The notes beneath the pieces are model-generated. The model was not told where the DNA came from, ran no database searches, and saw only the letters and a program-made list of their open reading frames with translations. The position numbers were made by a program, and so were the translations under genes. DNA of 64,000 nucleotides from Ruditapes philippinarum (lineage: Eukaryota): assembly GCF_026571515.1 (NCBI RefSeq), contig NW_026861937.1, forward strand, positions 1 through 64,000, written 5' to 3'. How positions within the stretch are numbered: position 1 is the stretch's first letter; each line of letters begins with the position of its first letter. Shown here piece by piece: positions 5,719-64,000 of this stretch.

Positions 5719-5741
5719 TACCAAAATCATTAAGACAGGAC

Positions 5742-15281: not shown

Positions 15282-15457
15282 TATTTATAACGTGTTTGAA
15301 GGCGTCACTTCCGTGTTGTACTGGGAAAATTTCGCTCGATTTGTATCAAGATATAAAAAGTGTAAAATAAAACAACTACTTTTCTGGTGTTATGAAGAAT
15401 TGTATTAGGGAAAACAGAACATTTTATAAATTATATGAATTTCTATTTTTTCTAAGA

Positions 15458-17554
15458 ATGTCGAGGATACCAGACTACTCTCCTAATTTATCACTTAAAA
15501 TGTCTCAAGTGATGCATGGACTTGGTGTAAATGAGAAGATAGTGATGAAAAGAAGAAGATCATGGCTACTGAATGAATCAATATTAACGTTAATTCAACA
15601 ACTTCTCGGTCATGATAGAAATGGGTTCTTCTTTGGTAGTCAAATAGAAGGTACAACAACTCTTGGATTACGGTCTGACACGGATTTTCTTGAATCTTTA
15701 AACAATATTAATGTGATACCAGACTTGAATGAATGGGAATATTGTAAACATAATTTGTTGATGATACAAGATATTAATGTCTCACCAGGATATTGTTTGT
15801 TACAAATATTACAAGATGATGCTCCACTACCACAAGAAGTCAAAGTTAATGACCATTCCTACAGAGACAGAATGGGGAGAATATTGTTAAAAAATACATA
15901 TTCTTATGGATTGGGAAATAGTGAATTAATAATTAGGAACGGCCCGGCTCATTCTGTACAAGATGTCCCTGGGGCCAAAGATAGTGATTTAGTTATTGCC
16001 TTTCCTTGTAAATTAAGACCAGTTCAAGCAGCGCATTGGTTAAATCAACATAGAGAAGAGCATTGGCCTACAAATGATATGATACAGTACTGTAGTAACA
16101 CGAAATGTTTTGTTGTAGGCGTTGGTAAAACAGGAAGTGTAAATGAAGCATTTGAATGGAGAATATCTACATCATTTGCAGAGAGATGTTTAATGTTTAA
16201 TCTTAACATAACACAAATCAGGTGTTATGTTTTGATGAAAATGATTTTGAAAACATTTATAAATCAAAGATTTCCCGACAGCATTTCAAGTTTCATGTGT
16301 AAAACAGTTTTGTTACATTGCATTTCATGTACAAGATCTGGTGCATGGAACGAAAAAGCCCTCTTAACTTGTCTATCATTTTGTTTATCAACACTTTACA
16401 ACTGTGTTCATCAAGAATACTGTCCTCATTTCTTCATCACACAAAATAACTTGATGGGTGGGCGATTTACACCGGAGACTAAGTCGTTAATACTTGAAAC
16501 TCTTCGATATGTAATCGAAAGTAATGGAAGGGCATTGCTCGAAATTGAATGTGACTGCCTTGGCTTATGTCTTCAGTCAAATTTAAACGGTATTGAACAT
16601 TTTGTACCACCTATAATTTCTGGGCAATTACTAAGAGAAACAGCCCTTCATATAAGTTCAGATTTCAAAGATATCTTATGTGAAATGAATCATTTATCAC
16701 ATCAACCCACGATGCAAAAAATTTTAACAATTATTTCAAATTACCATAATGACAATTTCACAAACATAGATAGAAAAGCTTACCGTTTGATAACATGGTA
16801 TTTATGTAGTACACTTGGATCTGTTCTAGCATCTTTAAACATTAACCAACATGACCATTTTACATACAATAAGGCACTTGAATTCATGGCATTAGGATTT
16901 AACTCCGATGTAGCATCTGGTAAACTGAAACTTGCATCTTTCTTCTATTGTGACGGAGATATTGAGAGGACTGAAATGATCTTGAACAAAACTGAGGAAT
17001 GTTATGATGTTAGTATCGTTGAACCAGTATGTGAGTGTTATAATTTCGAACAGGCAAAAAGAAGAGACAGATTTGACAGGAACTGTTTTGAATCAAATGA
17101 AGAATGCTCTCTGTTTAAATATATAATAGCATCATGTGTCCGGTTTATACGATGTGAAATAAACTGTTGTCCATTAGAACTTCAACATGAAATGTTTAGA
17201 TCAACACAGGAAGACTTTGCTTACAGAAGTGAAGATGATGAATGGATGGACATGGCTGTTGTAGATTCTCTCCCTTACCTCTATTTCATGCAGTACAAGA
17301 CATATTCCCGTCTAGGAAGACAAGATGATAAACAGAGGGCCCTCTCTAATATTGCTAGAACAATTGATGTTGAACCAAATCTCGGACATAGGGAAACAGC
17401 ACTCAATCTTCTAGGACATTGTATGGAAGAAGAGAATAATGTAGAAAATGCATTGAAATGTTATGCGCGTTCCCTTCAGATTAGAGGGAGAAATAATTCG
17501 GCAAAAGTCCATATTTGTAAGCTGTTAAACAAATTGATCAATAACTTGTTGTAA
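15458..17554 (+). CDS. cGLR copy 2, 698 aa, type-A tail followed by a silent in-frame type-B module
   Basis: FGSQIEGTTTLGLRSDTD, DSDLV, EWRISTSFAER, SSFMCKT. Start set at the ATG homologous to the paralogs rather than 15392. Confidence 0.9.
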   Translation: MSRIPDYSPNLSLKMSQVMHGLGVNEKIVMKRRRSWLLNESILTLIQQLLGHDRNGFFFGSQIEGTTTLGLRSDTDFLESLNNINVIPDLNEWEYCKHNLLMIQDINVSPGYCLLQILQDDAPLPQEVKVNDHSYRDRMGRILLKNTYSYGLGNSELIIRNGPAHSVQDVPGAKDSDLVIAFPCKLRPVQAAHWLNQHREEHWPTNDMIQYCSNTKCFVVGVGKTGSVNEAFEWRISTSFAERCLMFNLNITQIRCYVLMKMILKTFINQRFPDSISSFMCKTVLLHCISCTRSGAWNEKALLTCLSFCLSTLYNCVHQEYCPHFFITQNNLMGGRFTPETKSLILETLRYVIESNGRALLEIECDCLGLCLQSNLNGIEHFVPPIISGQLLRETALHISSDFKDILCEMNHLSHQPTMQKILTIISNYHNDNFTNIDRKAYRLITWYLCSTLGSVLASLNINQHDHFTYNKALEFMALGFNSDVASGKLKLASFFYCDGDIERTEMILNKTEECYDVSIVEPVCECYNFEQAKRRDRFDRNCFESNEECSLFKYIIASCVRFIRCEINCCPLELQHEMFRSTQEDFAYRSEDDEWMDMAVVDSLPYLYFMQYKTYSRLGRQDDKQRALSNIARTIDVEPNLGHRETALNLLGHCMEEENNVENALKCYARSLQIRGRNNSAKVHICKLLNKLINNLL

Positions 17555-18734
17555 CTTATTTTAGAACAAGAATACCGCAAGGAAGATACTTCAAAATGCT
17601 TTCAGATGTCCTTTAATATACAAAGTTGACACAATTCTGCAAAGTGTCAAATATTTAGACTGTTAGCATCCGTTTATGATTAGAACCAAAACATATATGT
17701 TTAAGGGCATACACGGCTTACCTATATAACAACAGCGTAGGTATGGTTACGATAAACTATTCATAACAAAGCAAATGCTTTGATTGCCTAAAAAGGACTT
17801 TACCTTCAACAGGAAAGAAACCTTTTGGAAATACTTGACCATTGTAAAATAGTTCATTTATTTTTATGTTTTGCAAACAAGATATCTTGTAAGATATTAG
17901 GAATATATAACAATACACAGAGAAACAATAAACCTTTAAATAGACATGGAGGACAGATTAAAAAAGCACCGAATATTCATGTACAGTATATATTATGCAT
18001 TGTCATTTTGATACTCGCAATGTTTGCCCAGTAATTATCTAGTATGAGTCACTTGTTATATAGTTTTGAACATTATAAGTTTAAATTGAAATTATCTATC
18101 AGTGTTTAATCTTGCAACACCAGAGTGTTTTGCTTATGGTGGGGTATTTTGCCAATTAACTGTCATCTCAAACACAATGTAATTTCAAGAGTGTCATGTG
18201 TCATATCAGATACGGTAACATTTTTAACCGTGTGAAAGTATAAACATAATACGTGTCTATTTAGATGAATAACAAAACGTTTCATTGTTGCATTTCGAAT
18301 AATATTAGATGAATATTTTCACTTTATCAAGAAACTGGCATTGTAACGGATTTCTTACAAAAAATAGTTCAAAACGTTACACATAATAGATGATTACTAA
18401 TATTATATTATAGTATTTTGTACGAACATGCTTTAGATTTTCACAATTTTATCAATTCATAACTTGTGGATGAAGGTGATCACTTAACAGTGTTGATTTT
18501 TCAGATACATCATAAAACTGAAAGTTACTTTTGCCCCAGTCAAAAATGATCCATTTTATTTATTTAATATATTATGTATGTATATTTTTCTCTGGATCTC
18601 TAATAAATATAATACATAAACTGCTGCATTTGTGTTTGTTTAATGGATTTGCCTTGCTTTAAATATTAAACAATTCATTTGAAACTAGATGAAATGCAAA
18701 CATAATAGAGGTTGGTCATTCACCACGGATGTGC

Positions 18735-21540
18735 AGACTGGCCTGTCTTTACATTCGTGGCAAAAGCTGACCACTTTCGATTTCAGCAGGCTGGCTAAGC
18801 TCTATACTTGTGGTAGAGGCTGACAACTTTCGGTTTCAGCAGGCTGGCCAGACTCTATACTTGTGGTAGAGGCTGATCACTTTCGATTTCAGCAGACTGG
18901 TCAGGCTCTATACTTGTGGTAAAGGCTGACTATTTTCGGTTACAGTTTGCTTGCCTGGTTCTATACTTGTGGCAGAGGCTGATTACTTTCGGTTTCAGCA
19001 GGTTGACCTTACTCTACACTTGTGGTAGAGGGTGACCAATTTCAGTTTCAGCAGGCTGGTCAGGCTCTTTTATTGTGGTAAATGCTAACCACTTTCGAAT
19101 TCAGCAGTCTGGCCTGGTTCTATACTTGTGGCAAAGGCTGACCACTTTCGGGTTCAGGGGGCTGACCTTGCTCCATACTTGTGGCAAAGGATGACTAATT
19201 TCGGTTTTAGCAGGCTGGCCAGGCCCTATACTTGTGCCAAAAATTGACAACTTTCGGTTTCAGCAGGCTGGGCTGGCTCGATACTAGCGGCAAAGGCTGA
19301 CTACATACGGTTTCATCAGGCTGGCTTGGTTCTATACTTGTGACAAAGGCTGATCACTTTCGATTTCAGTAGACTGGCCAGGTTCTATTCTTGTAGGAGA
19401 GGCTGACCACTTTCGGTTTCAGCAGGCTGGCAAGGCTCTATACTTGTGGTAAAGGATGACCACTTTCGGTATCAGCAGGCTGGCCAGGCTCTATACTTGT
19501 AGCAGAAGCTGACCACTTTCGATTTTAGCGGGTTTGTCAGGCCTTATAATTGTGGTATAGGCTGACCACTTTTGGTTTCAGCAGGCTGGCCTGGCTCTAT
19601 ACTTGTGGTTAAGGCTGACAACTTTCCGTTTTAGCAGTTTGGCCATATCTATTCTTGTAGCAGAGGCTGACAACTTTCGGTTTCAGCAGGCTCGTCAGGC
19701 TTTGAAATTGTGGTAAAGGCTGACCACTTTCGGTTTCAGCAGGCTGGCCAGGCTCTTTACTTGTGGCAGAGGCTGACCACTTTCGGTTTCAGCAGGCTGG
19801 TCAGGCTTTTGATTGTGATAAAGGCTGACGACTTTCCATTTCAGTAGGCTGGCTAGATTCTATACTTGTGGCAGAGGCTGAGCACTTTCGGTATCAGCAA
19901 GCTGACCAGGCTTTATACTTGTGGTAACGGCTGACCTCTTTCAGTTTCAGCAGGTTGGCCAGGCTCTCTACTTGTGGCAAAGGCTGACAACTTTTGGTTT
20001 CAGCAGATTGACCTGGTTCTTTAACAGTTGCAAAGAATGACCAATTCCCATCTCTTATTTAAACAGGCTGACTTGGCTCTTTACTGGTGGTAAAGGCTGA
20101 TAACCTTCGTTTTCAGCAGGCTGGTCAGGCCTTATACTTGTTGCAGAGGGTGACCACTTTCGGCTTCAGCAGGCTGGCCAGGCTCCATATTAGTGGCAAA
20201 GGCTGACTCCTTTCGGTTTCAGCAGACTGACCTGGGTCCATTCTAATGGCAAAGGCTGACTACCTTCGGTTTCAGCAGGCTGGCCTGGCTCCATAGTAGT
20301 GGCAAAGGATACCTATCTTTGGTTTCAGCAGGTTGGCTGGCCCCATATAAATGGGAAAGGCTGGACTATCTTGTTTAGCAGCAGGCTGGCCTGGTCCTAC
20401 TTGGGAAAGATATTATTTTGGTTTCAGCAGGCTGGCCAGGCTTTTATACTTGTGGCAAAATTGACTACTTTCGGTTTCGGCAGGCTCCCCGGTCGATATA
20501 GAGGGAAAGGGTGACTACTTTCGGTTTCAGCAAAGGGTGCCCGGCTCCTTTCTAGGGAGCAAAGGGTGACACTTTTCAGTGGATCAGGCTGGCCTGGTTC
20601 TATACTTGTGGCAATGGCTGACCATTTTCGATTTCAGTAGCTAGGCTGGCCAGGCTCTATACATGTTGCAGAGGCTGACCACTTTCGGTTTCAGCACGCT
20701 GGCAAGGCTCTATACTTGTGGTCAAGGATGACCACGTTCGGTTTCAGCAGGCTGGCCACTCTCTAAACTTGTAGCAGAGGCTGACCAATTTCGGTTTCAG
20801 CAGGCTGGTCAGGCCTTATATTTGTGGTACAGGCTGGCCCACTTTTGGTTTCAGCAGGGCTGGCCCAGGATCTATACTTGTGTAAAGCCGGCAACTTCGG
20901 TCTCAGCAGGCGGCCAGGCTCTTATATACTTGTAGGGCAGAGACTGGACCACTTTCGGTTTCAGCAGCCTGTCCTGTTCTATACTATTAGCAAAGGCAGA
21001 CACTTTCAATTTCAGCAGACTGCCAGGCTCTAATTATACTTGTGGTAAAGGCCGCAACTTTCGGTTTCAGCAGGCGGCCAGGATCATATACTTGTGGTAA
21101 AAGGGCCGGCAACTTTCGGTCTCAGCAGGCTGGCCAGGCTCTATACTTGTTAGCAGAGACTGACCACTTTCAGGTTTCCAGCAGCCTGTCCTTGTTCTAT
21201 ACTTAGCAAAGGCAGACACTTTCAATTTCAGCAGACTGCCAGGCTCTAATATACTTGTGGCACGAGGCTGACCACTGTTGGTCTCAGCAGGCTGGTACAG
21301 GGGCTTTTTAATTGGGAAAAGGCTTATCCACTTTCGATTATAGTAGGCCTGGCAAGGTTCTATAAACTTGTGGCAGAGGTCATTCCTTATTCAAAGCAGA
21401 ATGACTTGCTCCCTTTACTGGTGGTAAAGGCTGGATCACATTCGCTTTTCAGCAGGGCGGGTCAGACTTTTATACTTGTTGGGGCGTTGAGTGACCTTTT
21501 TTTTTTTTTCAGCATGGGCGGGGGGGTGGCTGGGGTTTTA
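18735..21540 (+). repeat. 53-bp minisatellite array 1 (~53 units) with ISRE-like core
   Basis: Consensus GGCAAAGGCTGACCACTTTCGGTTTCAGCAGGCTGGCCAGGCTCTATACTTGT; period verified at 18781/18834/18887. The array is noisy after ~20300. Confidence 0.95.
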
Positions 21541-22667
21541 TACTTTTGGAGGACTTCGTTGTGCCTCAAAAATCAAGAAAATTTTGGCCGGATGCATTAC
21601 GCACTTGTAACATGGTCAAATGATTGGGTTTTTTAAAATTTCAATTCAACTTTTGAAAGGCATTCAATATAAAATTAATCAAGACCTTAGAAGGCGGCTT
21701 TTGCCTGGGCCAGATGAATAGGGGGATACTGTAATTTATTTCAGAAGGCATTCTCAGAGGGAGGTTGTCAGCACCCTTGAATGTTTTTCCCCTGTTTAAC
21801 AAAAAGGATTTTCAAAATAAAAAAAATTTTAGGGGAGATCTGGGACGTTTTGTTTACAACTCTTGGGATAATCCGATATATTTTCGATTTAGTTTCCAAA
21901 TGATATTGGTTTTCCCGGGAAAACTACTTTTTTTACGAAAAAGCTTTTCAAAAAAAAAATGCAACCCCGAAAAACCCAAAACCCAAAAAGGGAAAATTAT
22001 GATTTTGGGATGAATGCCCAGATGTCCTACAAATAAAAAAAACAAATTATTTTTTTTTGTAACATAAAAAGAAAATGTCATCAAACTCATCATAAATAAA
22101 ATGTTTCATCATTGACGTGATATTATATTTTTACATATTTTCCAAGCATCTCATAACATTTTGCTTTGTAAACTACAGAATGATCTTTTAACTTTTTCTA
22201 GTTTCGTTGTCCATCATACTTATCTAAGTAATTTTATACAAGAATGATCACTGCCAAATTAAAAACAAAATATAATATTACGGGGTAACAATTAAGTGTA
22301 CAGCTAGTAAAAAGTCTATTTATAATTAAAAGCTTTAAAGACATTTTGTCAAAATGATAAGTAACATTCCTTTTTTAATCCGGTTTCTCTGATAAAAAGT
22401 TCAAAATTAAATATATGTATAAGTAAGAAATAAAATACGTCTACATGGATATATGTATAAGGAATATTTTTGAAGCCTCTATATATATTTTAGCGTCAAA
22501 CAATTATAATTGCCCATACTATAATTTACCCACCACAAAGCGATTTTCTTTTCAATTGTTCTGTGTAAGAATTCAATTTACAAATAAGGAAACAAGGATT
22601 TATAGAAGCACTTTGTTGATTTACTATTTAGTACCATTCAAAACCTGTCCAATTCAGGTGTGATGCA

Positions 22668-22694
22668 TTGGAAATTCCAAACTTTTCGTTTTCG
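22668..22694 (+). promoter_or_regulatory. Composite NF-kB + IRF motif, copy 3
   Basis: TTGGAAATTCCAAACTTTTCGTTTTCG, followed by an AAG|GTAAGT donor at 22718. Confidence 0.5.
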
Positions 22695-22970
22695 GTTTTG
22701 TACAATTTCAATTTAAGGTAAGTATATTAACTTATTTCCCGTTTTTTTATTTGAAATGTTGAGCCCTGATTTTTAAATAGTTTAAATCATTTATAAAAGT
22801 TGCAATTTATAAATATTTTGGGTTTAAATGTGTCACAATCCATGTTTTACAGGGATCCATTTCAAAGTATAAATTGTTTTTAATTTTTATCGTGCAAATC
22901 TAATCTATTGGTATTAAGAAATACAGAAAATTCTATAAAACAAATGGAAATTTCTGTTTTATTTTTAGGC

Positions 22971-25101
22971 ATGCGAGATACCAGATTACGCTCACAATTA
23001 CTTAAAAAATGTTTCAAGTGAGAGATGGGACTTGGTTTAACGAGAAGATAGTGATTTGAAAAGAAGAAGATCCCAGCTACTGAATGAAAATCACTAATGA
23101 CGGGTTAACTCATCAGGCTACCGGTTGAAGATAAATAAATTTTTTCAAACTTTGGTAGTCAAATAGAACGTATACCAACAACTCTTCGGATTACAGTCTT
23201 GACGCAGATAGTCTTATACTCTATAAACAAATTTAATGTGATACAAGACTGGAGTGAATGGGAATATGGTAAGCACAATTTGTTGATGATACAAGGATGA
23301 AAATGTCTCTCCAGGATATTGTTTTTTACAAAAGTTTAAGAGATGAGTGCAGCCACTTACCGCTCCTAGTTGAAACTTGATAAATACATACCCAGGGAAG
23401 GGAATGGGGAGAATAATTGTTAAAAAATACAAAGTTTTTAATGTTTTACCTAAATTAGTACAAATGGCCCTGCTCATTCTTTTCAGATGTTCCTGGAGTC
23501 GAGGATAATGATATCGTTCCTCCTTTTCCATGTTAATAAGGACATTCCAGTTAGGCATTGTTAATTCAAATAGAGAAGAGCGTTTGGCCTCCAATTGATA
23601 TATACATACTGCACAGCAACACCACGAATGTTTTCTGTTGGTGTTGGAAAAAACAGGGGAGTGTAAAGGGAAGCATTTGAATGGAGAATATCTTCATCAT
23701 TTGCCAGTGAGGATTTTAATGTTTTTAATCTTAAATAACCACAAATTAGAAATTTTATGGGTGTTTGATGAAAATGATTTTGAAAAAACATTTTTATAAC
23801 TCAAACATTTCCGACAGCATTTCAAGTTTCATGTGTAAAACGTTTTTGTTACATTGTATTTATATACAGATCTGGTGCAATAGGAAGGAAAATATCCTTT
23901 TTACTTGTCGTATCATTTTGTTTATCAACACTTTACAGTGTGGTTCAAATGAATATTGTCCTCATTTCTTCATAACACAGAACAACTTGATGAGCGGGAG
24001 ATTTTTCTCGGAAACGAAGTCCGTTGATACTTGAGACTCTTCGTTATGAATCGAAAGTAATGGGAGGGCATTACTCGAAATTGAATACGATCTCCTTGTG
24101 GTTTATTTCTTCAGTCAAGTTTAAGCGGCATTGAACTAATAGATGCACATTTTATACCAACTTTATGTGCTGGGAAGTTTTCTAATTGAACTAGCGCTTA
24201 ATATAAATTGTGAAATTTCAAAAAATATATCTTAGGTGAAATGAATAATTTATCACATAGACCTACGATACAAAAACTTTTAACATTGATGACACATCAC
24301 CAAAATGCAAATTTTACAAACATAGATAGAAAAGCTTACCGTTTGATAACACGATATTTATGTAGTACACTTGGATCTATTCTAGCATCTTCAAACATTT
24401 ACCAACTAGACTATTTAACATACAAGAAGGCACTTGAATTCATGTCATTAGGACTTGACTCCGATGCAGCATTTGGTAAACTGAAACTAGCATCTTTCTT
24501 CTATTGTACCGGAGATATTGAGAGGACTGAAATTATCCTGAAACATATTGAGGAGTGTTATGATCTAAGTGTTGTTGAACCAGTGTGTGGGTGTTACTCT
24601 TTTGAAAAAGCTCCAATAAGAGAAAGTTTCAACAGATTATGTTATGAATCAAATGAAGAATGCACACTGCTTAAATATATAACAGCATCATGTGTCTGTT
24701 TTATACGATGTGAAATAAACTGTTGTCCATTTGAACTTCAACATGAAATGTTTAGATCAACACAGGAAGACCTTGCTTACAGAAGTGAAGATGATACATG
24801 GATAAATATGGCTGTGGTAGATTATCTCCCTTACCTCTATTTCATGCAGTACAATACATATTCCCGTCTAGGAAGACAAGATGATAAACAGAGGGCTCTA
24901 TCAAATCTGGCCAGAACCATTGATGTTGAACCAAATCTCGGACATAAGGAAACAGCACTCAACCTTCTCGGACAGTGTATGGAACAAGAATATCGCAAGG
25001 ACGATGCTTTGAAATGCTTTCTGATGTCCTTAAAGATACGAAGTAGGCATAATGCTGCAAAGTTTCATATATTTAGATTGTTAGCGTCATTTAATAATTA
25101 G
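22971..25101 (+). pseudogene. cGLR copy 3: 5' half heavily frameshifted (pseudogene or low-quality assembly), 3' 286 codons intact, type-B tail
   Basis: Collinear homology to paralogs from the ATG at 22971. The fragments ISSFMCKT and EYCPHFFITQNNL are present, and ORF 24241-25101 is clean, ending MEQEYRKDDALKCFLMSLKIRSRHNAAKFHIFRLLASFNN. Confidence 0.85.
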
Positions 25102-26569
25102 AATTGTAGGTTATATGTATACCCCAGATAACAGCAGCGTGGGAATGGTTGTGACCAGTAAAAATGATCAGATTGACACAAAAAGATCTTCAGTACAGAA
25201 CGATTGAGCCTTTTGGATGTGCATGGACACTGTGAATTAGTTCTTTTATTTTATTTTCTGCAAAACAAGTTGTCTTTGAAGATACTACGAATATACCGGT
25301 ATAACAATAAACAGAGAAAACATTAGCCTTTAAATAGATATGGAGGACAGATGACAAAAGCACTGAACATTTGTGTACAATGTATATTATGCATTGTCAT
25401 TTTAATAGTCACAATGTTTGCCAAATTAGTTTCTGGTAAGAGTCACTTATTCTATAGTTTTAAACCATATTAGTTTAAATAATAACTAGCTATCAGTGTT
25501 TAATCATTGCAAACCCAGAATGCCTTATTAGTAGTGGGGTATTTTTCCAATGAACTGTCAATTCAAAGGTCCCAAAATGTAATTTTAAGTGTCATCGGTG
25601 TCATTTCAGATACGGTAACATTTTTATCTGTCTTACAAAATACGTATCCATCTAGATGAATAACAAAAAGTTATATTGTTTCCTTTTAAATTACTATGTG
25701 TAAATAAATAATATTAGATGAAGATGTTCACTTTATTAAGAATCGCACTGGCATGGTAACGGATTTCTTACAAAGAAGAAAGCAAAATTTTACATATAAT
25801 AGATGATAACTAATATTCTAAGCAACGGAAGATTTAGGACAAAAAAATGAAATAATTTGCTATAAGAAGTGCCAGGCCCAGGGAAACATGAAATTCAAAT
25901 AATGAATGTTAGTAACCAATTTATTGTCAGTATTTGTATTTGTTTCAGATGTTGACTATGGAATCATATAAAATTGCTAATATACTTTTATATTGTCTGT
26001 GTTTTACGAACAGTTCAATCTAATTTTTTCAGTAGTGACATTATTCAGCCTGTATGTTGACAGTATTTTTACTTTTTGTTATAATATAATTGTACATGCT
26101 TTTTTAAATTTATTTTATGTTTGATAGTACAATATTAGCACTTAAATTATCATGTATTTTAAATGTAAGGAACACAACTTGTACTGTTGTATAATGTTTT
26201 CATGTACTCAAGAGTTATCTGTTTAAGATTATCTGTGCGACTCTATAGTTAAGTAATTTGTCCGAATATGCTTTAGATTTTCATAATTTCATCATATATT
26301 TCTTTACGTGTCGGTGTAAGTAAACACTTAACAGTGTTGATATTTCAGATACATCATAAAACTGACAGTTACTTTTGCTCCAGTCAAATGTGGCCCGTTT
26401 TTTCGTTTTAATATTGTGTTATGCATATTTTCTGGTTCTCCAATAAATATAACACTTAAACTGCCTAATTTGTGTTTGTTTAATGGTTTTGCCTTGCTTT
26501 AAATATTGAACAGTTTATTTGAAACTTAATGAAATATCAACAGACTAGAGGTTGGCAATACACCACGGA

Positions 26570-26880
26570 TGTGCAGGGTAGCCTAACTCTATACTTGTAG
26601 CGGAGCTGACCTCTTTCAATTTCAGCTGGCTTCCCTTTGTTCTATCTGTTGGAAAAAATGATCACACTCATAAAAAAGGGTTTGGGCCTGGCCTTACGGG
26701 TCAAAGGCTGTTTAAAATTTTTGGGTTTCAGCGGGCACCGGGCTCCAACGGGGGCGAAGGGCTGTCACATTAGAGTTTTCAGCAGGCTGCGTGGCTCTGT
26801 TCTGGTGAAACAGGCTAATCACATCCGATAACAGCGAGCTGGCCTGGTTATATACTGATGACAAAGGTTGATCACTTCGA
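26570..26880 (+). repeat. 53-bp minisatellite array 2 (~6 degraded units)
   Basis: Follows the same CACCACGGATGTGCAG entry sequence; degenerate GCTGA..TTTC..TTTCAGC units. Confidence 0.7.
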
Positions 26881-27637
26881 CGGTAAGGGTTAGATAGCAT
26901 TTGAACTTAAACAGTGTAAAAGCCGTTGTAACGAAGAAATATGACCCGTGTTAAATAAAGGTTACCTTATTTCATAAAATACACAGGTACTAACTCGACT
27001 AGACTACCTTCGAAGAAAAATCCTTTCCCTGAGAAAGCTGTTGAGTATTCACCCAGTCAATCTCGAACTGACTTTTAACAGAGAAAGCTGCTGCTGTTGT
27101 CATAACATAAGTGTTGTGTTCTGTATGCATTTTATGTATGCATATGACAAATAAACAAGACTTTAGGCTCGAACTCATGATCTCTAGGTTGGGGATGTCA
27201 TAATACTTTGACCGGTATGTCATTATATTAAAACTAAGTAGTTTATATATTTATAAAAGGATAATGATCGGGTGTGTTAATTTCATGATGTTCTCTTTTC
27301 TTCTTACATACAAAGCAATGGTTGGGAAAGGTATTGAAAGGTTTGTCATCCTATATGTACAAACTTACTAGACGTCCACTTTCCCAGGCCCTCTGCAAAA
27401 ATATGTTTAATAACAGAGAAATGTTATATTTAAACTCTTCCTAGAAACCACCATTACAGTATGTAAACAACATATCATCATATTTGTTTCGTCTATAAAT
27501 TTTGTTTAAATGTGCATTGAATATAGTCTTTCAACCTTTGACCTTTTACTTCATGAGCATTTTGTGAAACAAATGGCTGTTTTCATTGAAAAACCTCCTG
27601 TTACAAGTTTAAACTGCTATGAAACTATGAAAAATGA

Positions 27638-30028: not shown

Positions 30029-30054
30029 TTTGAAATTCCAACTTTCGTTTTCGT
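30029..30054 (+). promoter_or_regulatory. Composite NF-kB + IRF motif, copy 4 (kB half altered to TGAAATTCC)
   Basis: TTTGAAATTCCAACTTTCGTTTTCGT. Confidence 0.55.
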
Positions 30055-30325: not shown

Positions 30326-32422
30326 ATGTCGAGGGTACCAGATTACGCTCACAATTTATCACTTAAAATGTCTCAAGTGATGGATAGGATTTGTGTTAGC
30401 GAGAAGATAGTGATGAAAAGAAGAATATCAGGGCTACTGCGTGAATCACTATTTGCGTTTAATCATAAGCTACGCGATAAAGATTTGAATGTATTCTTGT
30501 TCGGTAGTCAAATAGAAGGAACAACAACTCCAGGATTACAGCCGGACGTAGATTGTATTATATCTATAAAGAATTATAATGTGATACAGGACTTGAGTGC
30601 ATGGCAAAATGGTAAAGTTAATTTGTTGATGATACAAAATGAGAATGTCTCACCAGGATATTGTTTGTTACAAGCGTTAAGAGGTGATGCGCCTCTACCA
30701 CAAGAAGTTGAAGTTGATGACAATTTCTATAGAGACAGAATGGGTAGACTATTGTTAAAAAATACAATGTTTGATGGTTTACATGACGCAGTAAGAAACG
30801 GCCCTGCTCATTCTTTTCAAGGTGTTCCTGGACTCGAAGATAGTGATTTCGTTGCTGCCTTGCCCTGTGATTTAAGACCAGTTCAAGCACAGCATTGGTT
30901 TAATCAGCATGGAGAAGAGCATTGGCCTACAAGTGGTATGATACAGTACTGCAGTAACACACGATGTTTTGTTGTAGGCGTTGGAAAAACAGGAATTGCA
31001 AATGAAAAGTTTGAATGGAGAATATCAACATCATTTGCAGAGAGATTTTTAATGTTTACTCTAAACATAACACAAATTAGATGTTATGTTTTGATGAAAA
31101 TGATTTTGAAAACATTCATAAAACAAAGATTTCCTAACAGCATTTCAAGTTTCATGTGTAAAACCGTTTTGTTACATTGTATTTCAGATACAAGATCTGA
31201 CGCATGGAAGGAAAATACCCTCTTTACTTGTCTATCATTTTGTTTATTAAGACTTTACGACTGTGTTCAAAATGAATACTGTCCTCATTTCTTCATCACA
31301 CAAAATAACTTGATGAGCGGGCGATTTACTCCAGAAACAAAGCCGTTAATACTTAAAAATCTTCGATATGTAATCGAAAATAATAGAAGGGCATTACTCG
31401 GAATTGAATGCGACTACTTTGGTTCATTTCTTCAGTCAAGTTTAAACGGTATTGAAATTTATATACCAACACATTATATGCCAACATTCATTGCTTGGGA
31501 TATACTAAAAAATTCAGCCCTTGCTATAAGCATAGAAGTCAAAGTTCTGTTACGTGACGTGAATAATTTATCACCAAGACTTGCAATGCAAAAACTTTTA
31601 AAATTTATTTCAAATCACTATTTTCAGAATTTCATATTCGAAAATAGAAAAGCTTACCGTTTGTTATCAAGATATTTATTTAGTACTCTTGGATCTATTC
31701 TAGCATCTTTAAACATCAACCAACAAGACAATTTAGCATTTAAGAAGGCGCTTTCATGCATGTCATTAGGACTTGACACCGATGTAGCATCTGGTAAACT
31801 GAAACTAGCATCAATGTTCTATTGTACCGGAGATAATGTGAGGACTGAACTTATCCTGAAAAATATCGAGGAGTGTTATGATCTAAGTGCTGTTGAACCA
31901 ATGTGTGGGTGTTACTTTTTCAAGTATGCCCAACCAAGAGAAAAATTCTACAGATTATGCTACGAGTCAATCAAAGAATGCGCACTACTTAAAGATATAA
32001 CAGCATCATGTGTCTGTTTTATAAAATGTGAAAGAAACTGTTGTCCATTAGAACTTCAACATGAAATGTTTAGATCAAAACAGGAAAACATTGCTTACAG
32101 AAATGAATATGAGTATTGGATGGACATGGCCGTTGTAGATTCTCTCCCTTACCTCTATTTCATGCAGTACAAGACATATTCCCGTCTAGGAAGACAAGAT
32201 GATAAACAGAAGGCTCTCTCTAACATTGCCAGAACCATTGATGTTGAACCAAATCTCGGACATAGGGAAACAGCACTTAATCTTCTAGGACAGTGTATGG
32301 AACAAGAGAATAATGTAGAAAATGCTTTCAAATGTTATGCGCGTTCCCATCAGATTAGAGGACGATATAATTGGGCAAAAATCCATATTTGTAAGCTGTT
32401 AAACAAATTGATCAATAACTAG
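30326..32422 (+). CDS. cGLR copy 4, 698 aa, type-A tail followed by a silent in-frame type-B module
   Basis: FGSQIEGTTTPGLQPDVD, DSDFV, EWRISTSFAER, SSFMCKT, CPHFFITQNNL. The ATG at 30326 follows a TATAG acceptor. Confidence 0.9.
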   Translation: MSRVPDYAHNLSLKMSQVMDRICVSEKIVMKRRISGLLRESLFAFNHKLRDKDLNVFLFGSQIEGTTTPGLQPDVDCIISIKNYNVIQDLSAWQNGKVNLLMIQNENVSPGYCLLQALRGDAPLPQEVEVDDNFYRDRMGRLLLKNTMFDGLHDAVRNGPAHSFQGVPGLEDSDFVAALPCDLRPVQAQHWFNQHGEEHWPTSGMIQYCSNTRCFVVGVGKTGIANEKFEWRISTSFAERFLMFTLNITQIRCYVLMKMILKTFIKQRFPNSISSFMCKTVLLHCISDTRSDAWKENTLFTCLSFCLLRLYDCVQNEYCPHFFITQNNLMSGRFTPETKPLILKNLRYVIENNRRALLGIECDYFGSFLQSSLNGIEIYIPTHYMPTFIAWDILKNSALAISIEVKVLLRDVNNLSPRLAMQKLLKFISNHYFQNFIFENRKAYRLLSRYLFSTLGSILASLNINQQDNLAFKKALSCMSLGLDTDVASGKLKLASMFYCTGDNVRTELILKNIEECYDLSAVEPMCGCYFFKYAQPREKFYRLCYESIKECALLKDITASCVCFIKCERNCCPLELQHEMFRSKQENIAYRNEYEYWMDMAVVDSLPYLYFMQYKTYSRLGRQDDKQKALSNIARTIDVEPNLGHRETALNLLGQCMEQENNVENAFKCYARSHQIRGRYNWAKIHICKLLNKLINN

Positions 32423-33719: not shown

Positions 33720-34478
33720 TGTGCAAGCTGACCTGGCTTTACATTCATGGCAAAAGCTGACCACTTTCGATTTCAGCAGACTGGTCAGGCTCTATACTTG
33801 TAGCAGACGCTGACTACTTTCGGTTTCAGCTGGGTTGCCTGGTTCTATACTTGTGGCAGAGGCTGATAACTTTCGGTTTCAGTAGGCCGGCCAAGCTCAA
33901 TACTTGTGGCAGAGATGGACCACTTTCGATTTCAGCAGGCTGGCTAGCCTCTATACTTGTGGTACAGGCTGACTACTTTCGGTTTCAGCTGGCTGACCTG
34001 GTTCTATACTTGTGGCAGAGGCTGATCATTTTCGGCTTCAACAGGCTGGCCAGGCTCTATACTTGTGGCAGAGGCTGACCTCATACGGTTTTAGCAGGCT
34101 GGTCAGGCGGTATACTTGTGGCGAAGGCTGACCTCTTTCGGTTTCAGCAGACTGGTCAGGCTCTTTAATTGTGGAAAAGGCTGACCACATTCTGTTTCAA
34201 CAGCTCTTTAATTGTGGAAAAGGCTGATCACTTTCGGTGTCAGCAGGCTGCCAGGCTCTATACTTGTGGCAGAGACTGACCACTTTAGGTTTCAGCAGGC
34301 TTGTCAGTCTCTTTAATTGTGGTAACGGCTGACCACTTTCGTTTCAGCAGGCTGGCCTGGTTCTATACTTGTGGCAAAGGCTGACTACTTTCGGTTTCAG
34401 CAGGCTAGCCTGCTTCTATACTTGTGGAAGAGGCAGACCACTTTCGGTTTCAGCAGGCTAGCCAAGCTCTTTACTTGG
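33720..34478 (+). repeat. 53-bp minisatellite array 3 (~14 units)
   Basis: Same consensus as array 1. Confidence 0.95.
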
Positions 34479-41560: not shown

Positions 41561-43555
41561 CTGGCCTGGCTTTATACTTATGACAAAGGCTGACAACTTT
41601 CGGTTTCTGCAAGCTGGCCTGGCTCTATACCTATAGCAAAGGCTAACAACTTTCGGTTTCAACAAGCTGGCCTGACTTTATACTTATGGCAAAGGCTGGT
41701 CACTGTCAGTTTCAGCAAACTGGTCTGGCTCTATACTTATGGCAAAGGCTGGCAACTTTCGGTTTCTGCAAGCTGGCCTGGCTCTATACCTATAGCAAAG
41801 GCTAACAACTTTCGGTTTCAACAAGCTGGCCTGACTCTATACTTATGGCAAAGGCTGGTCACTGTCAGTTTCAGCAAACTGGCCTGGTTCTTTACTTGTG
41901 GCAAAGGCTGACAACTTTCAGTTTCAGCAAGCTGGCTTGACTCTATACTTATGGCAAAGGCTGACAACTTTCGGTTTCGGCAAGCTGGTCTGACTCTGTA
42001 CTTATGACAAAGGCTGATCACTTCCGGTTTCAGAAAACTGGCCTGGCTCCATACTTATGGCAAAGGCTGACAACTTTCGGTTTAAACAAGCTGGTCTGAC
42101 TCTATACTTATGGCAAAGGCTGACAACTTTCGGTTTCAGCAAGCCGGTCTGACTCTATATTTATGGCAATGGCTGATCACTTTCGGTTTCAGCAAGCTGG
42201 CCTGGCTCTATTATTATAACAAAGGCTGTCAACTTTCGGTTTCAGCAAACTGGTCTGGCTCAAAGGCTGACAATTTTCGGTTTCAGCAAGCTGGCCTGGC
42301 TCTATACTTATGGCAAAGGCTGACAACTTTCGGTTTCAGCAAGCCGGTCTGACTCTATGCTTATGGCTTAGTCTAATCACTTTCGGTTTCAGCAAGCTGA
42401 CCTGGCTCAAAGGCTGACAATTTTCGGTTTCAGCAAGCTGGCCTGGCTCTATACTGGTGGCAGAGGCTGACAACTTTCGATTTAGGCAATCTGGCCTGCC
42501 TATACTTATGGCAAAGGCTGACAACTATCGGTTTCAGCAAACTTGTCTTAATCTATACTTATGGCAAAGGCTGACAACTTTCAGTTTCAGCAACCTGGCC
42601 CGATTCTATACTTATGGCAAAGGCTGATCACTTTCGGTTTCAGCAAACTTGCCTAACTCTATACTAATGGCAAAGACTGACAACTTTCGGTTTCAACAGG
42701 CATGCCTGGTTCTATGCCTGTGGCAAAGGCTGATAACTTGCGGTTCCGATGGGCTGGCCTGGTTCTATATGTGCGGTAAGTACTGATCATTTTCGGTTTC
42801 TGAAAGCTGGACTGGCTCTTTACTTGTGGCAAAGGCTAATCACTTTCGGTTTCAGGAGGCTAGCCTGCCTTTATACTGGTTGCAAAGGCTGATCATTTTC
42901 TGTTTCAGGAGGCTAGCCTGCCTTTATACTGGTGGTAAAGACTGATCACTTTCTGTTTCAGGAGGCTAGCCTGCCTTTATACTGGTGGTAAAGGCTGATC
43001 ACATTCGTTTTCAGGAGGCTAGCCTGCCTTATATACTGGTGGTAAAGGCTGATCACTTTCGGTTTCAGGAGGCTAGACTGCCTTTATACTGGTTGCAAAG
43101 GCTGATCACATTCGTTTTCAGGAGGCTAGACTGCCTTATATACTGGTTGTAAAGGCTGATCACTATCGGTTTCAGCAGGCTGGACTGGCTCTTTACTGTT
43201 TGCAATAACTGATCACTTTTTTTTTTTGAAAAGTCAAACCTGGCTCTATCGTAATGTAAATAATTCATCACTTTTGGTTTTGACTAAAGGTTGGACTGGC
43301 TCTTTACTGGTGGCAATAAGTGATCACTTTTTGTTTCAGAAGGCTTGTCTGTCTCTTTCTAAATGGCAATGGCTAATCTATTGCGGTTTCAGCACGCTGT
43401 CGTGACTCAATACTGGTGGCAAAGGCTGGTAACACTTGATTTCAGCAGGATGACTTGTTTCAATACTATTAGAAAAAGCTGATCACTTTCGGTTTCCACA
43501 GGTGGGCATGCCTCTATCCTGGTGAAAAAGGTGGATCACTTTTGGCTTTAGTAGG
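41561..43555 (+). repeat. 53-bp minisatellite array 4 (~37 units, with internal variant subfamilies)
   Basis: Same period and core as array 1. A 159-bp (3x53) duplication is visible at 41607/41766. Confidence 0.95.
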
Positions 43556-46500
43556 TTAAGGCTTAAATAACATATCAATTTGTGCATTGTTAGAATCAAT
43601 GAACTCGAGGAACAAATAAATATAACAACATAGAAATGATGAATGTGGCCTTATTTTACAGCTGCCAGATTTTATTTCTGTCATCTTGTTCAATGGTATT
43701 CCCTATTCAAATAATCCGCAAAGTTTTCAAATGCATACTCTTTAATTTTTTGTTGAATTGAATATACAATACTCAGTGCTGTCTTTGAATTTTCTGAAAA
43801 TGTTTTAATCGTTTTTGGTAATCAACAACGAATATATTATACGCTCCCCATCCATTAATTACAACAATATCTGAGGTAACCGACAATGTGTCTCCACCTT
43901 CTCTAACACTGGTGTAATGTTTACTCCGAAATAAACATATACAAATGTATCGCTTTCTTATGAAGAAAGCTGACTTAGTTGAAACATATTTATTCAAACA
44001 ACTTGAAGTTTATTTATACCACTCTCAAGTCGATTCCTGGAACTATTTTCTATCTGGGTCATATGACGACATATAAGCGAGACCCCATTTAGGCTCAAAC
44101 CCATGATCTCAGGATTCAGAATGTCAGAATTCTCATAAGAATATGTCATGTTTAAGGGAAAAGGGCCAAAGGTTTGGAGAAGAATGGAGCCAATCCGCTC
44201 TTTTTTCGTACATTTACTCTGAAGTGAACAACATGAAAATAAGAAAAACTCAGGTATTGTTTACCTTTATTGTGAATTATCTGTCCTTGAATGAAGTAAA
44301 AAAACTCGAATTAATATACAGTGAACTCAATGACGAGAACGGTGACCCTTATTTTGTTTCGCTTAAAATGTTTCTATTATCATATTCTAACAACATGATA
44401 AATTTTAAGGCATATTCTAACAACATGCCGCATTTCCTTGTTGATCTTTTTCATCATATTTTTAGAAGTTCTATTAAACAGTTTTAATTTGGCCTATATG
44501 TTCATATGAAAACTTCCGAAAACGACATTTTAACAGCAATGTTCTGTAAAAAAAAATATAGGCTGGTTCCATAATTTCATGGTGTTCACTTTACTTTCAA
44601 GGTAAGAATCAATGGCCAGTAAGTACACAGAAAGTATTGAAAGTTTTGTCATCTAACACGTACAGACTTAGATCTACTAGATTTCCACTTCCCTCGGCCC
44701 TCGTCAAGAACATATAACACTAGTATAAAATCGTACAGTTGTTTTTGGTAATATAATTAATGTACATGTAACCAGATGAAAATGAGTTTGAAGTGTGTTA
44801 AGGCATCATTTATGACACCGCGCCTGAACACAGTATTTTGTTTGTTGTTGTTGTGGCTGATAATGTTGTTGTCGTTTTTAGCTGAGTACTACACTAATTT
44901 AATATGCTGTTATAATCTGTTGCTATAAAATGGTTGTAAACTTCTAGTTTTTAAAAGTCATTTATAATTAGATTTCACAAATGCTTTAACTGCAATGTTC
45001 AAATCCCTAAAAAGGACTAAGCAATACACTTGATAAGACTTTCATTTTGTTAGATTTTTAGTTTTTCCACTTCAAGAAGATGGTAAGAGAAGCTGGTAAA
45101 GGTACATTACGACATTTGAAAATTTCAAAAGAAGATGTTAAAAAAGAGATAAACAGAATCCCTAAAGAAGGTCCAACACAACACAATTGAAAATGTTGCA
45201 GGCTCGGTTTGATTGAGCCTGTTCATGAACGGTACTGGAAAGTGCAAGTGACCGTCCACGTCCCCTAGCACCGACTTAAGCAGAATTCAACATTTAACAC
45301 GAAAATGGTGAAATTTTGAATTAAGAATCATCCGCAGATGTGTTCATAACCATTACTACCGAAATATGAAGAAACATTACAACAGCTTAGTGATACTATA
45401 AAGGTTTTAGCTTCTTGTGCCAATATATTTTTTTATATCATATTTAAATACGTCTGAGAACATGTTAGATGCACGTGACCTGAAGAAAGCACTGAATGTG
45501 TAATTATTTAATCATTGAAATGTAATGAAGTAGTGTTTTAACTTTAATACAAAATAAAAATACTACATCACTATAACTGCACTAATTGCCAGAGCAACAT
45601 AAGTCATTAAGTAACTATAGTCAACAAGATATACTAAAAAGAAAAGAATGTCTGAGGCATAATGGGCATTTAAATATTTATAAGGTGTTTACAAATAATA
45701 AAGTAATAATGTGGCATAGATGCATAGGCTAAACAAAAACATTCAATTTTCAGTTGTAAAAAAATTATGATTAATTACTTTAATCTTTAAGACATCAGAT
45801 AAATGTTGTTAAAGGCACAAACAGTTATATGTACAGGAATATATTTATGTTTATTATATCTTTTATGATAATTAATAATGATATACATGATAATGTAAGT
45901 AACTGAAAGGTTGTTTATCTACTGAGGTGCCTGCTTGTGCATAAAAGCATTGGTACTTTTCTTCATTTTTTGGCAAAATACTAGTAGATACCAAATTCCA
46001 GGCCTTTTGCACCTGCAGTATCAGTAAACAACTGTATTTCTTTATTTGATCTCGGAAAACGATCATGAAAAACTGTAACAATGACATTAAACCCACATAT
46101 GCAAATTACAGACTCTTATACCCACATAATTATACAGACTCGGTTTAATTGTTCTCTTTATGAGAAGTTATGTAAAAATGCAACATCTCTCACGCTCACT
46201 AGCACCCGCTAAATTGGTATCCAATCCTTATACACTAACATGCTCAAATTACTTATCTCGCAAGACCATTTTAGAATTGACTTATTGGCATAGTACTGAC
46301 TATAAGAAATTTGTTAAATAAGATATATGTATATTTATTTGCAGAATGAAAAACCGAAGAGAAAATACACGCCCAAGAAGTTACAGAAAGCCGAGATAAA
46401 GAACAATACTGGATAATACATTATACTATTTTATAGAAATAAAGTTTTGAAAATAAACATTCAACTTTTTTTGTCTTCAATTAGAGGCTTTTGTGTCCTC

Positions 46501-63786: not shown

Positions 63787-64000
63787 ATGTGCAGGCTGGC
63801 CTGGTATTACATTCGTTGCAAAAGCTGATCACATTCGATTTCAGCAAGTTGGCCAGGCTCTATATATGCACTTTCGGTTTCAGAAAGCTGACATTACTCT
63901 ATACTAGTGGCAATGACTGATCACTTTCGATTTCAGCAGCAGGCATGGCTTGATACTTATGGCAAAGTTTGACCACTTTCGATTTCAGCAAGTTGGCCTG
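63787..64000 (+). repeat. Start of 53-bp minisatellite array 5 (runs off the window)
   Basis: GGATGTGCAGGCTGGCC entry followed by ACTTTCG(G/A)TTTCAG units. Confidence 0.85.

What the first reader, a model, noticed from the sequence alone, without database searches (positions are those of the whole stretch)
18735..21540. Minisatellite made of ISRE/IRF sites: candidate tandem-repeat immune enhancer (or decoy) system inside a cGLR cluster
Seen: five arrays of one 53-bp unit (~53, ~6, ~14, ~37 and >=4 units, at 18735, 26570, 33720, 41561, 63787) each begin ~1.2-1.6 kb after a cGLR stop and lie upstream of the next gene; array 1 abuts the conserved upstream block of copy 3. The most recognisable part of each unit is ACTTTCGGTTTC. 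Common variants change the two central bases (GA, AG, TG, GT), although motif-breaking variants also occur. Known: the reverse complement GAAACCGAAAGT fits the IRF-E/ISRE consensus GAAANNGAAA(G/C)Y, and cGAS/cGLR-STING-TBK1 signalling converges on IRF/NF-kB. The same motif occurs singly in these genes' upstream modules (ACTTTCGTTTTC). 53 bp is about five B-DNA turns, which would put all sites on one helical face. Inference: roughly 110 phased IRF sites could act as a copy-number-tunable enhancer giving feed-forward induction of nucleic-acid sensors, or as an IRF sink. I know of no description of this arrangement.
Basis: partly seen in the sequence, partly recalled or inferred. Interest (0 to 1): 0.9.

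Follow-up and report, generated by a model that had tools for sequence, protein, structure and literature searches.

The report
Transposon-derived minisatellite beside cGLR genes
The 53-bp repeat is real, but it is a stretch of a common small transposon (a MITE) that expanded in place and was then copied along with a duplicating immune-sensor gene, so its interferon-type binding motif is largely inherited and its proposed enhancer role is untested.

Summary
There are five same-strand arrays of one 53-bp unit (51.8, 5.8, 14.2, 37.6 and at least 3.9 units), each 1.2-1.6 kb after a Mab21/cGLR-TPR gene.

The origin is ordinary. The unit is the segment between two GCAGG microhomologies exactly 53 bp apart in the 3' part of a roughly 205-bp MITE. 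This MITE has TTAA target duplications and CCC...GGG inverted ends, and at least about 2,000 candidate copies genome-wide. In the window the arrays still sit between the MITE's 5' part and its 3' inverted end. Two other loci expanded the same MITE with 33- and 42-bp units that lack the ISRE-like core.

The array flanks are paralogous, and the ISRE-bearing form occurs only on contigs carrying this gene subfamily. One insertion, expansion and co-duplication therefore explain the link to cGLR genes.

Only 57 of about 110 window units keep GAAANNGAAA, and their phasing drifts. CpG decay is symmetric, array length is erratic, and RNA contigs barely touch the arrays.

The ten motif columns are the best-conserved in the unit (rank 1 of 53; p about 0.005-0.05), and an aligner artefact does not explain this.

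Verdict: a MITE-derived minisatellite. An exapted IRF enhancer remains possible (about 0.12).

The parts
18733..21479 (+). Array 1 of the 53-bp unit: 51.8 units, 23 intact TTTCNNTTTC cores. The right end lacks the MITE 3' end and joins the upstream block of pseudogene copy 3.
18611..18732 (+). Decayed 5' part of the progenitor MITE (5' inverted-end remnant, body, left arm of the internal hairpin), immediately left of array 1. Equivalent remnants lie at about 26451-26572, 33601-33722 and 63669-63790. It is deleted before array 4.
26573..26877 (+). Array 2: 5.8 degenerate units with 1 intact core, followed at 26878-26893 by a remnant of the MITE 3' inverted end.
33723..34477 (+). Array 3: 14.2 units with 8 intact cores. 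It is truncated on the right by another repeat (34478-34900).
41561..43555 (+). Array 4: 37.6 units with 22 intact cores. It ends in unit column 34 (..AGG) and is followed by the MITE 3' end.
43556..43566 (+). Remnant of the MITE 3' inverted end plus TTAA (TTAAGGCTTAA), bounding array 4.
   Evidence: compare the dispersed copies
63791..64000 (+). Array 5, cut by the window end. It continues on the contig (L033 25-125 and 408-690, the latter ending in the MITE 3' end).
15392..17554 (+). Mab21/cGLR-TPR gene copy 2: intact 720-aa single-exon ORF. Array 1 lies 1.18 kb downstream.
22978..25098 (+). Copy 3, a pseudogene. Homology is spread over three reading frames and only a 286-aa ORF is left. It lies between arrays 1 and 2.
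30326..32422 (+). Copy 4 coding exon, followed by array 3. Other copies: 7608-9701 and 49758-51851 (no array downstream), 38122-40218 (array 4) and 60117-62216 (array 5).
30031..30052 (+). Promoter or first-exon module: a kB-like site directly followed by ACTTTCGTTTTC, just before a GTAAGG donor. Equivalents lie at 7327-7348, 37842-37863, 49472-49493 and 59830-59851. An RNA contig joint 30075>30326 supports the 5'UTR intron.

Best explanation
The repeat is a transposon-derived minisatellite.

Origin. A roughly 205-bp non-autonomous DNA transposon of piggyBac type inserted about 1.2 kb downstream of a Mab21/cGLR-TPR gene. It has TTAA target-site duplications, 13-14-bp inverted ends reading CCC...GGG, and a long internal hairpin.

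Expansion. Two GCAGG pentamers lie exactly 53 bp apart in its 3' part. Slippage or unequal exchange between them duplicated the intervening segment. That segment comprises the right hairpin arm, the subterminal ACTTT(C/T)GGTT(C/T)C and the inner half of the 3' inverted end. Further unequal exchange built arrays.

Spread. The gene, its 3' flank and the expanded MITE were then amplified together as a duplicon of about 7.5 kb. This placed paralogous arrays after many members of this one gene subfamily. The arrays have since drifted in length (2 to 82 units) and in sequence (about 17-20% from consensus).

The ISRE-like dodecamer. It is the MITE's own subterminal sequence, with two positions different from today's common MITE form.

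Shown: repeat structure, MITE identity and boundaries, the 53-bp microhomology spacing, paralogy of flanks, and genomic distribution.

Inferred: the order of events, and that the arrays are mainly neutral passengers (possibly substrates for unequal recombination) rather than a selected IRF-binding system.
For: Half the unit is a dispersed element.
- A 34-mer covering half the unit hits 315 places on over 100 contigs, on both strands (174 and 141). The ISRE-bearing 30-mer hits 151 places (148 and 3), only on cluster contigs.
- The 5' part of the MITE alone gives 2188 first-look candidates; all 40 that were scored lie on different contigs.

MITE structure.
- Full-length copies are 201-209 bp with TTAA on both sides and CCCTTAACCTGCT / CAGCAGGTTAAGGG ends.
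- The element folds into a strong hairpin, z = -7.2.
- The two GCAGG are 53 bp apart in every sampled copy that keeps both and has no indel.

Arrays lie inside a MITE copy.
- The window arrays are bounded on the left by the decayed MITE 5' part and hairpin arm.
- On the right they are bounded by the MITE 3' end plus TTAA.

The same MITE expanded elsewhere.
- There are independent arrays with other registers: 33 bp x 22.8 (L049) and 42 bp x about 12 (L059). Both lack the core.
- Dispersed copies mostly read ACTTTTGGTTCC (22 of 37).

Co-duplication.
- Flanks of the arrays are 77-83% identical paralogues.
- 12 of 13 other array loci have the gene or a pseudogene no more than 3.6 kb upstream on the same strand.

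Decay.
- CpG decay in the core is symmetric, and only 49% of 437 units keep the core.
- RNA-type contigs cover the coding sequence at depths of tens to thousands, but the array bins at 0-30.

Known mechanism. The slippage-between-short-repeats model for TE-derived minisatellites is established (review PMC6947457).
Against: - The ten ISRE-defining columns are the most conserved of all 53 circular shifts of that mask. They exceed other columns of the same base class by 0.078 (permutation p 0.005; rare variants only, p 0.05). The two N columns are less conserved.
- A neutral simulation shows the aligner does not create this pattern. It is what weak constraint on IRF sites would give.
- The amplified unit differs from the common MITE form at exactly the two positions that complete the second and first TTTC half-sites.
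- The neighbouring genes carry a kB-plus-ISRE module in their promoters, so IRF regulation of this locus is plausible.
- The piggyBac assignment lacks an identified autonomous partner.
Confidence: 0.75

Rival explanations
1. Exapted enhancer. The MITE-derived array is a multimerised ISRE. After nucleic-acid sensing it is bound by IRF proteins and boosts transcription of the flanking cGLR paralogues (feed-forward), with array length tuning the response.
For: - The consensus core fits GAAANNGAAA(G/C)(C/T).
- The motif columns are the best conserved and the NN columns are looser.
- The array form is restricted to one cGLR subfamily whose promoters carry kB plus ISRE.
- A cGAS/STING-TBK1-IRF axis is reported in oyster (PMC8218723).
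- Multimerised ISREs drive reporters (my own knowledge).
Against: - The association is fully explained by co-duplication.
- Half the sites are broken and CpG decay is symmetric.
- Array length ranges from 2 to 82 units without relation to gene intactness. Two of seven window genes lack an array, and the longest faces a pseudogene.
- Same-MITE arrays elsewhere lack the motif.
- There is no clear RNA signal over the array.
- The conservation signal rests on about a dozen high-frequency variant columns and is marginal for rare variants.
Confidence: 0.12
2. IRF decoy or sink. The arrays titrate IRF proteins away from promoters and so damp or buffer the response.
For: There are many clustered consensus-like sites.
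Against: - About 213 intact cores were found in all arrays examined.
- Against that, the genome holds an estimated 2x10^5 GAAANNGAAA matches. This is a crude extrapolation from 39.5 kb of unrelated loci and from the non-array window, and it makes the arrays about 0.1% of sites.
- No evidence of accessibility.
- The co-duplication and decay arguments given for the enhancer rival apply here too.
Confidence: 0.03
3. Recombination substrate. The kilobase-long direct arrays recurring every 7-8 kb mainly matter because they promote unequal crossing-over and gene conversion. That would drive copy-number change in this cGLR cluster. It is compatible with the best explanation rather than exclusive of it.
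For: - Arrays lie in direct orientation after many paralogues.
- One rearranged junction type (array column 2 joined to the next gene's upstream block) is shared by array 1, L031, L032 and L035.
- The gene family is very large, with 863 first-look candidates.
Against: - Units within an array are as diverged (72-80% matches) as the duplicons are from one another (77-88%). Recent exchange is therefore not evident.
- Duplicon boundaries were not mapped to the arrays.
- More distant subfamilies of the gene expanded on contigs where no hit to the array was listed.
Confidence: 0.1

Closest known systems
Tandem-repeat-containing MITEs of bivalves (e.g. DTC84 of Donax trunculus, PMC3879986; MITE-linked BIV160 and HindIII satellites listed in PMC6947457)
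   Same: A short non-autonomous DNA transposon carries an internal array of tandem repeats, in a mollusc genome. There is a continuum between the dispersed element and the tandem array.
   Different: - In DTC84 the repeats are a regular module of the mobile element (up to five 156-bp units). Here normal copies carry one unit-equivalent, and the long arrays (up to 82 units) are locus-specific expansions.
- The element here has TTAA duplications and CCC...GGG ends (piggyBac type).
- The unit here is 53 bp and contains an ISRE-like core.
Minisatellites born from SINE/Alu or LTR elements by slippage between short direct repeats (Haber and Louis model, as reviewed in PMC6947457)
   Same: A 5-bp direct repeat (GCAGG) flanks exactly the segment that became the unit. 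The array stays embedded in the progenitor element. The same element seeded several arrays with different registers.
   Different: The progenitor here is a DNA-transposon MITE in a mollusc. The array was afterwards propagated by segmental gene duplication.
Helentron-borne satellite-like arrays dispersed in Crassostrea gigas (PMC7492417)
   Same: Short tandem arrays scattered in gene-rich DNA of a bivalve, linked to a non-autonomous mobile element.
   Different: Those arrays travel with the mobile element throughout the genome. The 53-bp array here is confined to one gene cluster and its paralogues, and the element shows inverted ends with TTAA duplications, not Helentron ends.
Transposon-derived interferon-inducible enhancers of mammals
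   Same: A mobile element supplies IRF/STAT-type sites next to innate-immune genes. It is the closest precedent for how the array would work if it is functional.
   Different: Those are dispersed single copies, with binding and enhancer function shown by ChIP and genome editing. Here the sites are multimerised in tandem, no binding or activity data exist, and the link to the genes arises by co-duplication.

Membership tests
piggyBac-type MITE | TTAA target-site duplication flanking the element | tested here: met
   TTAA (or a one-base variant) on both sides of the full-length copies L050, L055, L056 and L057; TTAT on the 5' side and TATA on the 3' side of L044. The array right ends are followed by TTAAGG(G/C)TTAA.
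piggyBac-type MITE | Short terminal inverted repeats beginning 5'-CCC and ending GGG-3' | tested here: met
   CCCTTAACCTGCT at the 5' end and CAGCAGGTTAAGGG at the 3' end. The ends pair in the DNA fold.
piggyBac-type MITE | Small, non-coding, high copy number, both orientations | tested here: met
   201-209 bp. 2188 first-look candidates; all 40 that were scored lie on different contigs. 174 forward and 141 reverse hits of a 34-mer.
piggyBac-type MITE | An autonomous partner encoding a piggyBac transposase with the same ends | not tested
TE-derived minisatellite (slippage between short direct repeats) | The progenitor carries short direct repeats flanking exactly one unit | tested here: met
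   GCAGG...GCAGG are 53 bp apart in L046, L048, L056 and L057 (54 in L044, which has an indel).
TE-derived minisatellite (slippage between short direct repeats) | The array is embedded between the progenitor's own flanking parts | tested here: met
   Left: MITE 5' part and hairpin arm. Right: MITE 3' end. Seen in window arrays 2 and 4 and in L033, L034, L037, L038 and L041.
TE-derived minisatellite (slippage between short direct repeats) | Recurrent, independent arrays from the same element | tested here: met
   A 33-bp array on C979 (L049) and a 42-bp array on C964 (L059).
ISRE / IRF-E regulatory element | Sequence fits GAAANNGAAA(G/C)(C/T) | tested here: met
   The consensus unit fits. Of 437 complete units, 213 keep the 10-nt core and 163 fit the strict form. 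In the window, 57 and 46 of about 110.
ISRE / IRF-E regulatory element | Motif positions evolve under constraint relative to neighbouring positions | tested here: inconclusive
   For: the motif mask ranks 1 of 53, +0.078 within base class, p 0.005 (rare variants p 0.05). Against: symmetric CpG decay, TG 41 against CA 34. No unbiased neutral control from dispersed MITE copies could be obtained.
ISRE / IRF-E regulatory element | Bound by IRF proteins and confers stimulus-dependent transcription | not testable with these tools
   Needs EMSA or CUT&Tag, ATAC and reporter assays.
cGAS-like receptor (cGLR) genes, for the flanking genes | Mab21 fold with similarity to characterised cGLR/cGAS | tested here: met
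   Pfam Mab-21_C PF20266, E 3e-12. The best solved relative is 8gjy 'cGAS-like receptor 1', E 1.1e-8, followed by many cGAS chains.
cGAS-like receptor (cGLR) genes, for the flanking genes | Catalytic GS ... [D/E]x[D/E] nucleotidyltransferase motif and nucleotide-signal synthesis | tested here: inconclusive
   A GS followed 12 residues later by DTD is visible in the 720-aa ORF (read by eye). The Pfam nucleotidyltransferase-core model was not matched. Enzymatic activity is not testable here.

The most novel reading that the evidence does not exclude
A MITE's subterminal sequence was multimerised into arrays of dozens of near-consensus ISREs. These arrays were retained next to a rapidly duplicating cGLR subfamily as IRF-responsive, length-tunable enhancers. 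This would be a tandem-repeat form of transposon-driven wiring of an invertebrate interferon-like response, acting with the kB-plus-ISRE promoters of the same genes.
Probability: 0.12. Interest if true: 0.75.

Novelty: new member of a known kind. Interest (0 to 1): 0.3.

Why it matters
As it stands, this is a clean, well-bounded example of how a minisatellite is born from a transposon. A 5-bp microhomology sets the unit, the array stays inside the element, and the whole is then carried along by gene amplification.

It also shows why a transcription-factor motif repeated a hundred times near immune genes is not in itself evidence of selection.

If the residual possibility proved true, it would show that tandem expansion of a mobile element can create a dosage-tunable immune enhancer in a mollusc. 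It would also give a handle on how the very large cGLR families of these animals are regulated.

Tried and rejected
- Coding repeat: rejected. 53 is not a multiple of 3, and no ORF of 90 aa or more lies in arrays 1-2, nor of 150 aa or more in any array.
- Structured RNA family: no Rfam match over 17500-22700.
- SINE/LINE tail or Helitron 3' hairpin as the source of the unit: this was my first reading of the dispersed copies. I dropped it once inverted ends and TTAA duplications were seen.
- Aligner or T-run artefact as the cause of the conserved core: rejected by a neutral simulation (difference -0.003, sd 0.009).
- An older MITE subfamily already carrying the full core: an exact-pattern search found only 8 hits, 7 of them in arrays, so this stays unresolved.
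- Unbiased neutral control from dispersed MITE copies: not obtained. 
- Expression: the runs available are assembled contigs, three of them only guessed to be RNA. They show where contigs lie but not transcript ends or levels.
- Complex prediction, structure prediction and the large protein searches were not used, because they would not bear on the repeat.
Full report
**Observation**

Tandem Repeats Finder reports a 53-bp period at 18757-21379, 33748-34477 and 41561-43197. A wrap-around alignment to the consensus unit delimits five arrays:
- 18733-21479 (51.8 units)
- 26573-26877 (5.8 units)
- 33723-34477 (14.2 units)
- 41561-43555 (37.6 units)
- 63791 to the window end (at least 3.9 units)

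All lie on the + strand. ACTTTCNNTTTC occurs 51 times against 0.25 expected.

**Gene context**

The window holds seven tandem paralogues of a gene whose coding sequence lies in a single exon. An example is 15392-17554 (720 aa). It matches Pfam Mab-21_C at 3e-12. Its best solved relative is 8gjy, 'cGAS-like receptor 1', at 1.1e-8, followed by many cGAS chains, and it has a TPR-like C-terminus.
- Copy 3 (22978-25098) is a frame-shifted pseudogene.
- Five copies carry a kB-like site directly followed by ACTTTCG(T/A)TTTC just before a GTAAGG donor.
- A contig joint 30075>30326 supports a 5'UTR intron there.
- The whole genome (1.41 Gb) gives 863 first-look candidates for this protein.

**The arrays are paralogous, not independent**

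A self-comparison of the window shows a duplicon of about 7.5 kb. The sequences immediately left of the arrays are homologous at 77-83% identity: 18399-19499 with 33389-34477, 25933-26626 with 33105-33777, and 33135-33944 with 63179-63997. Copies 1 and 6 have a different downstream region and no array.

Genome-wide, three searches agree:
- A 161-bp piece of array 1 matches only contigs C10424, C10764, C4899, C5951, C13895, C12943 and C399.
- A 30-mer containing the ISRE-like core, with up to 3 mismatches, hits 151 places (148 forward, 3 reverse). All listed hits lie on six of those contigs.
- The same contigs, C5951 excepted, carry the closest relatives of the gene, at 65-77% protein identity. 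More distant relatives (50-56%) lie on other contigs, none of which is among the listed array hits. C5951 holds only pseudogene fragments of the gene.

In 12 of 13 further array loci, the gene or a pseudogene lies no more than 3.6 kb upstream on the same strand.

**What the unit is**

RNA-type contigs laid on array 3 had loose ends that continued into a sequence unlike the window. This prompted a search with the other half of the unit. A 34-mer hits 315 places on more than 100 contigs, 174 forward and 141 reverse.

Eighteen of these loci were fetched. They show:
- a dispersed element of 201-209 bp
- TTAA on both sides
- inverted ends CCCTTAACCTGCT and CAGCAGGTTAAGGG
- a long internal hairpin (DNA fold z = -7.2)

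A reference copy is L057:854-1062. The 5' part of this element alone gives 2188 first-look candidates, and all 40 that were scored lie on different contigs. These are the hallmarks of a piggyBac-type MITE. An autonomous partner was not sought.

**How the array arose**

In the MITE, two GCAGG pentamers lie exactly 53 bp apart (L046, L048, L056, L057; 54 bp in L044, which has an indel). The segment between them is the minisatellite unit.

In the window the arrays are still embedded in a MITE copy:
- To the left lie the decayed 5' inverted end, the body and the left hairpin arm (18611-18732 and equivalents).
- To the right, where the junction is preserved, the last unit stops at ..AGG and is followed by TTAAGG(G/C)TTAA. 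This is seen in array 4 and in L033 and L037, and in decayed form in array 2, L034, L038 and L041.
- Array 1, L031, L032 and L035 share a secondary junction that removed the 3' end.

This is the classical route to a minisatellite: slippage or unequal exchange between short direct repeats flanking the future unit, as reviewed in PMC6947457.

The same MITE made other arrays elsewhere with other registers: 33 bp x 22.8 on C979 (L049) and 42 bp x about 12 on C964 (L059). Neither includes the ISRE-like core. The 53-bp period is therefore set by the microhomology spacing, not by helical geometry.

**The ISRE-like core**

- Dispersed MITE copies mostly read ACTTTTGGTTCC at this place (22 of 37 exact-pattern hits). 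Some CpG-containing or CA variants occur, and 2 of 37 have TTTCNNTTTC. The array consensus differs at two positions.
- Among 437 complete units from all arrays examined, 213 (49%) keep TTTCNNTTTC and 163 (37%) fit the strict consensus.
- In the window, 57 units keep the core and 46 fit the strict form.
- The central CpG has decayed to TG (motif-breaking) in 41 units and to CA (motif-sparing) in 34. There is no asymmetry.
- Only 24 of 52 neighbouring intact sites are exactly 53 bp apart. At 10.5 bp per turn the phase drifts, so only about a quarter of sites in arrays 1 and 4 share a helical face with the first. At 10.6 bp per turn the nominal period would be in phase, but indels still break the register.

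- The ten specified columns have mean conservation 0.89, against 0.82 averaged over all 53 columns of the unit.
- Their mask ranks first of 53 circular shifts. In four subsets it ranks 1, 6, 3 and 1.
- Within base classes the excess is 0.078 (permutation p 0.005).
- The two N columns are lower, at 0.78 and 0.72.
- Counting only rare variants, the excess is small (-0.016 in variant load, p 0.05). Most of the signal therefore comes from about a dozen high-frequency variant columns that happen to lie outside the motif.
- A neutral simulation with uniform rates shows that the aligner does not create the effect.
- Sequence-context effects on mutation (T runs) and amplification history remain possible causes.

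**Expression**

Contigs from one recorded RNA run and three guessed RNA runs were laid on 29700-35699.
- They cover the coding exon at summed depths of tens to thousands.
- They fade through the 3' flank to about 33500.
- They give 0-30 over the array bins 33700-34299.
- The high depth at 34300-34899 belongs to dispersed repeats. Contigs there continue into the MITE hairpin arm rather than into the array, and an unrelated repeat lies at 34478-34900.
- Contigs cannot show transcript ends or levels, so this is weak evidence that the array is not part of a mature transcript.

**Sink hypothesis**

GAAANNGAAA occurs 7 times in 39.5 kb of unrelated loci and 9 times in 58 kb of non-array window. That extrapolates crudely to about 2x10^5 sites genome-wide. 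The roughly 213 intact array sites are about 0.1% of that.

**Verdict**

The structure is a MITE-derived minisatellite that rode a gene amplification. This is a known kind of event, here with unusually clear boundaries.

The enhancer idea is not excluded. The core is a good ISRE, a cGAS/STING-TBK1-IRF axis exists in bivalves (PMC8218723), the promoters of these genes carry kB plus ISRE, and there is a weak conservation signal. I put a selected or physiologically relevant IRF-enhancer role at about 0.12, a decoy role at about 0.03, and a role as a recombination substrate at about 0.1.

Noticed in passing
window 7327-7348, 30031-30052, 37842-37863, 49472-49493, 59830-59851: A kB-like site (GGAAATTCC) is directly followed by an ISRE-like ACTTTCG(T/A)TTTC, about 20-30 bp before a GTAAGG splice donor, in five of seven paralogues. 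A contig joint 30075>30326 supports the 5'UTR intron. No such module was found in front of copy 2 (intact ORF) or pseudogene copy 3.
   Followed up: partly
window 3072-6860 (+): Three consecutive ORFs with reverse transcriptase, RNase H and integrase domains: the pol region of an LTR retrotransposon, just upstream of gene copy 1. Observed only.
   Followed up: partly
window 55125-56090; also L047 (C14865:79231-84045): A 146-bp tandem repeat (6.7 copies). By eye, the reverse complement of its unit also flanks two MITE copies on contig C14865, so it appears to be a dispersed, possibly element-borne, satellite-like repeat.
   Followed up: no
window 34478-34900: A repeat with an internal inverted repeat abuts the right end of array 3. 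It is very highly represented in all four laid runs (summed contig depth up to about 11,000), so it is probably another abundant small mobile element.
   Followed up: no
L038 4833-5051 (C4899, about 54332-54550) and L041, minus strand: A tRNA-like sequence (resembling a SINE head) is inserted into the 53-bp array and splits it in two. The same insertion is present in two loci, which are therefore paralogous or allelic.
   Followed up: no
L049 278-1031 (C979) and L059 875-1400 (C964): Independent minisatellites made from the same MITE's hairpin arm, with 33-bp and 42-bp units and 88-95% matches. They are younger-looking than the 53-bp arrays.
   Followed up: partly
window 22978-25098: Gene copy 3 is a pseudogene. 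Homology is spread over three frames, with low identity in the middle. It nevertheless keeps the full duplicon layout, with arrays on both sides.
   Followed up: partly
whole genome: The Mab21/cGLR-TPR family is very large: 863 first-look candidates, with dozens of intact single-exon copies in tandem clusters on many contigs.
   Followed up: no
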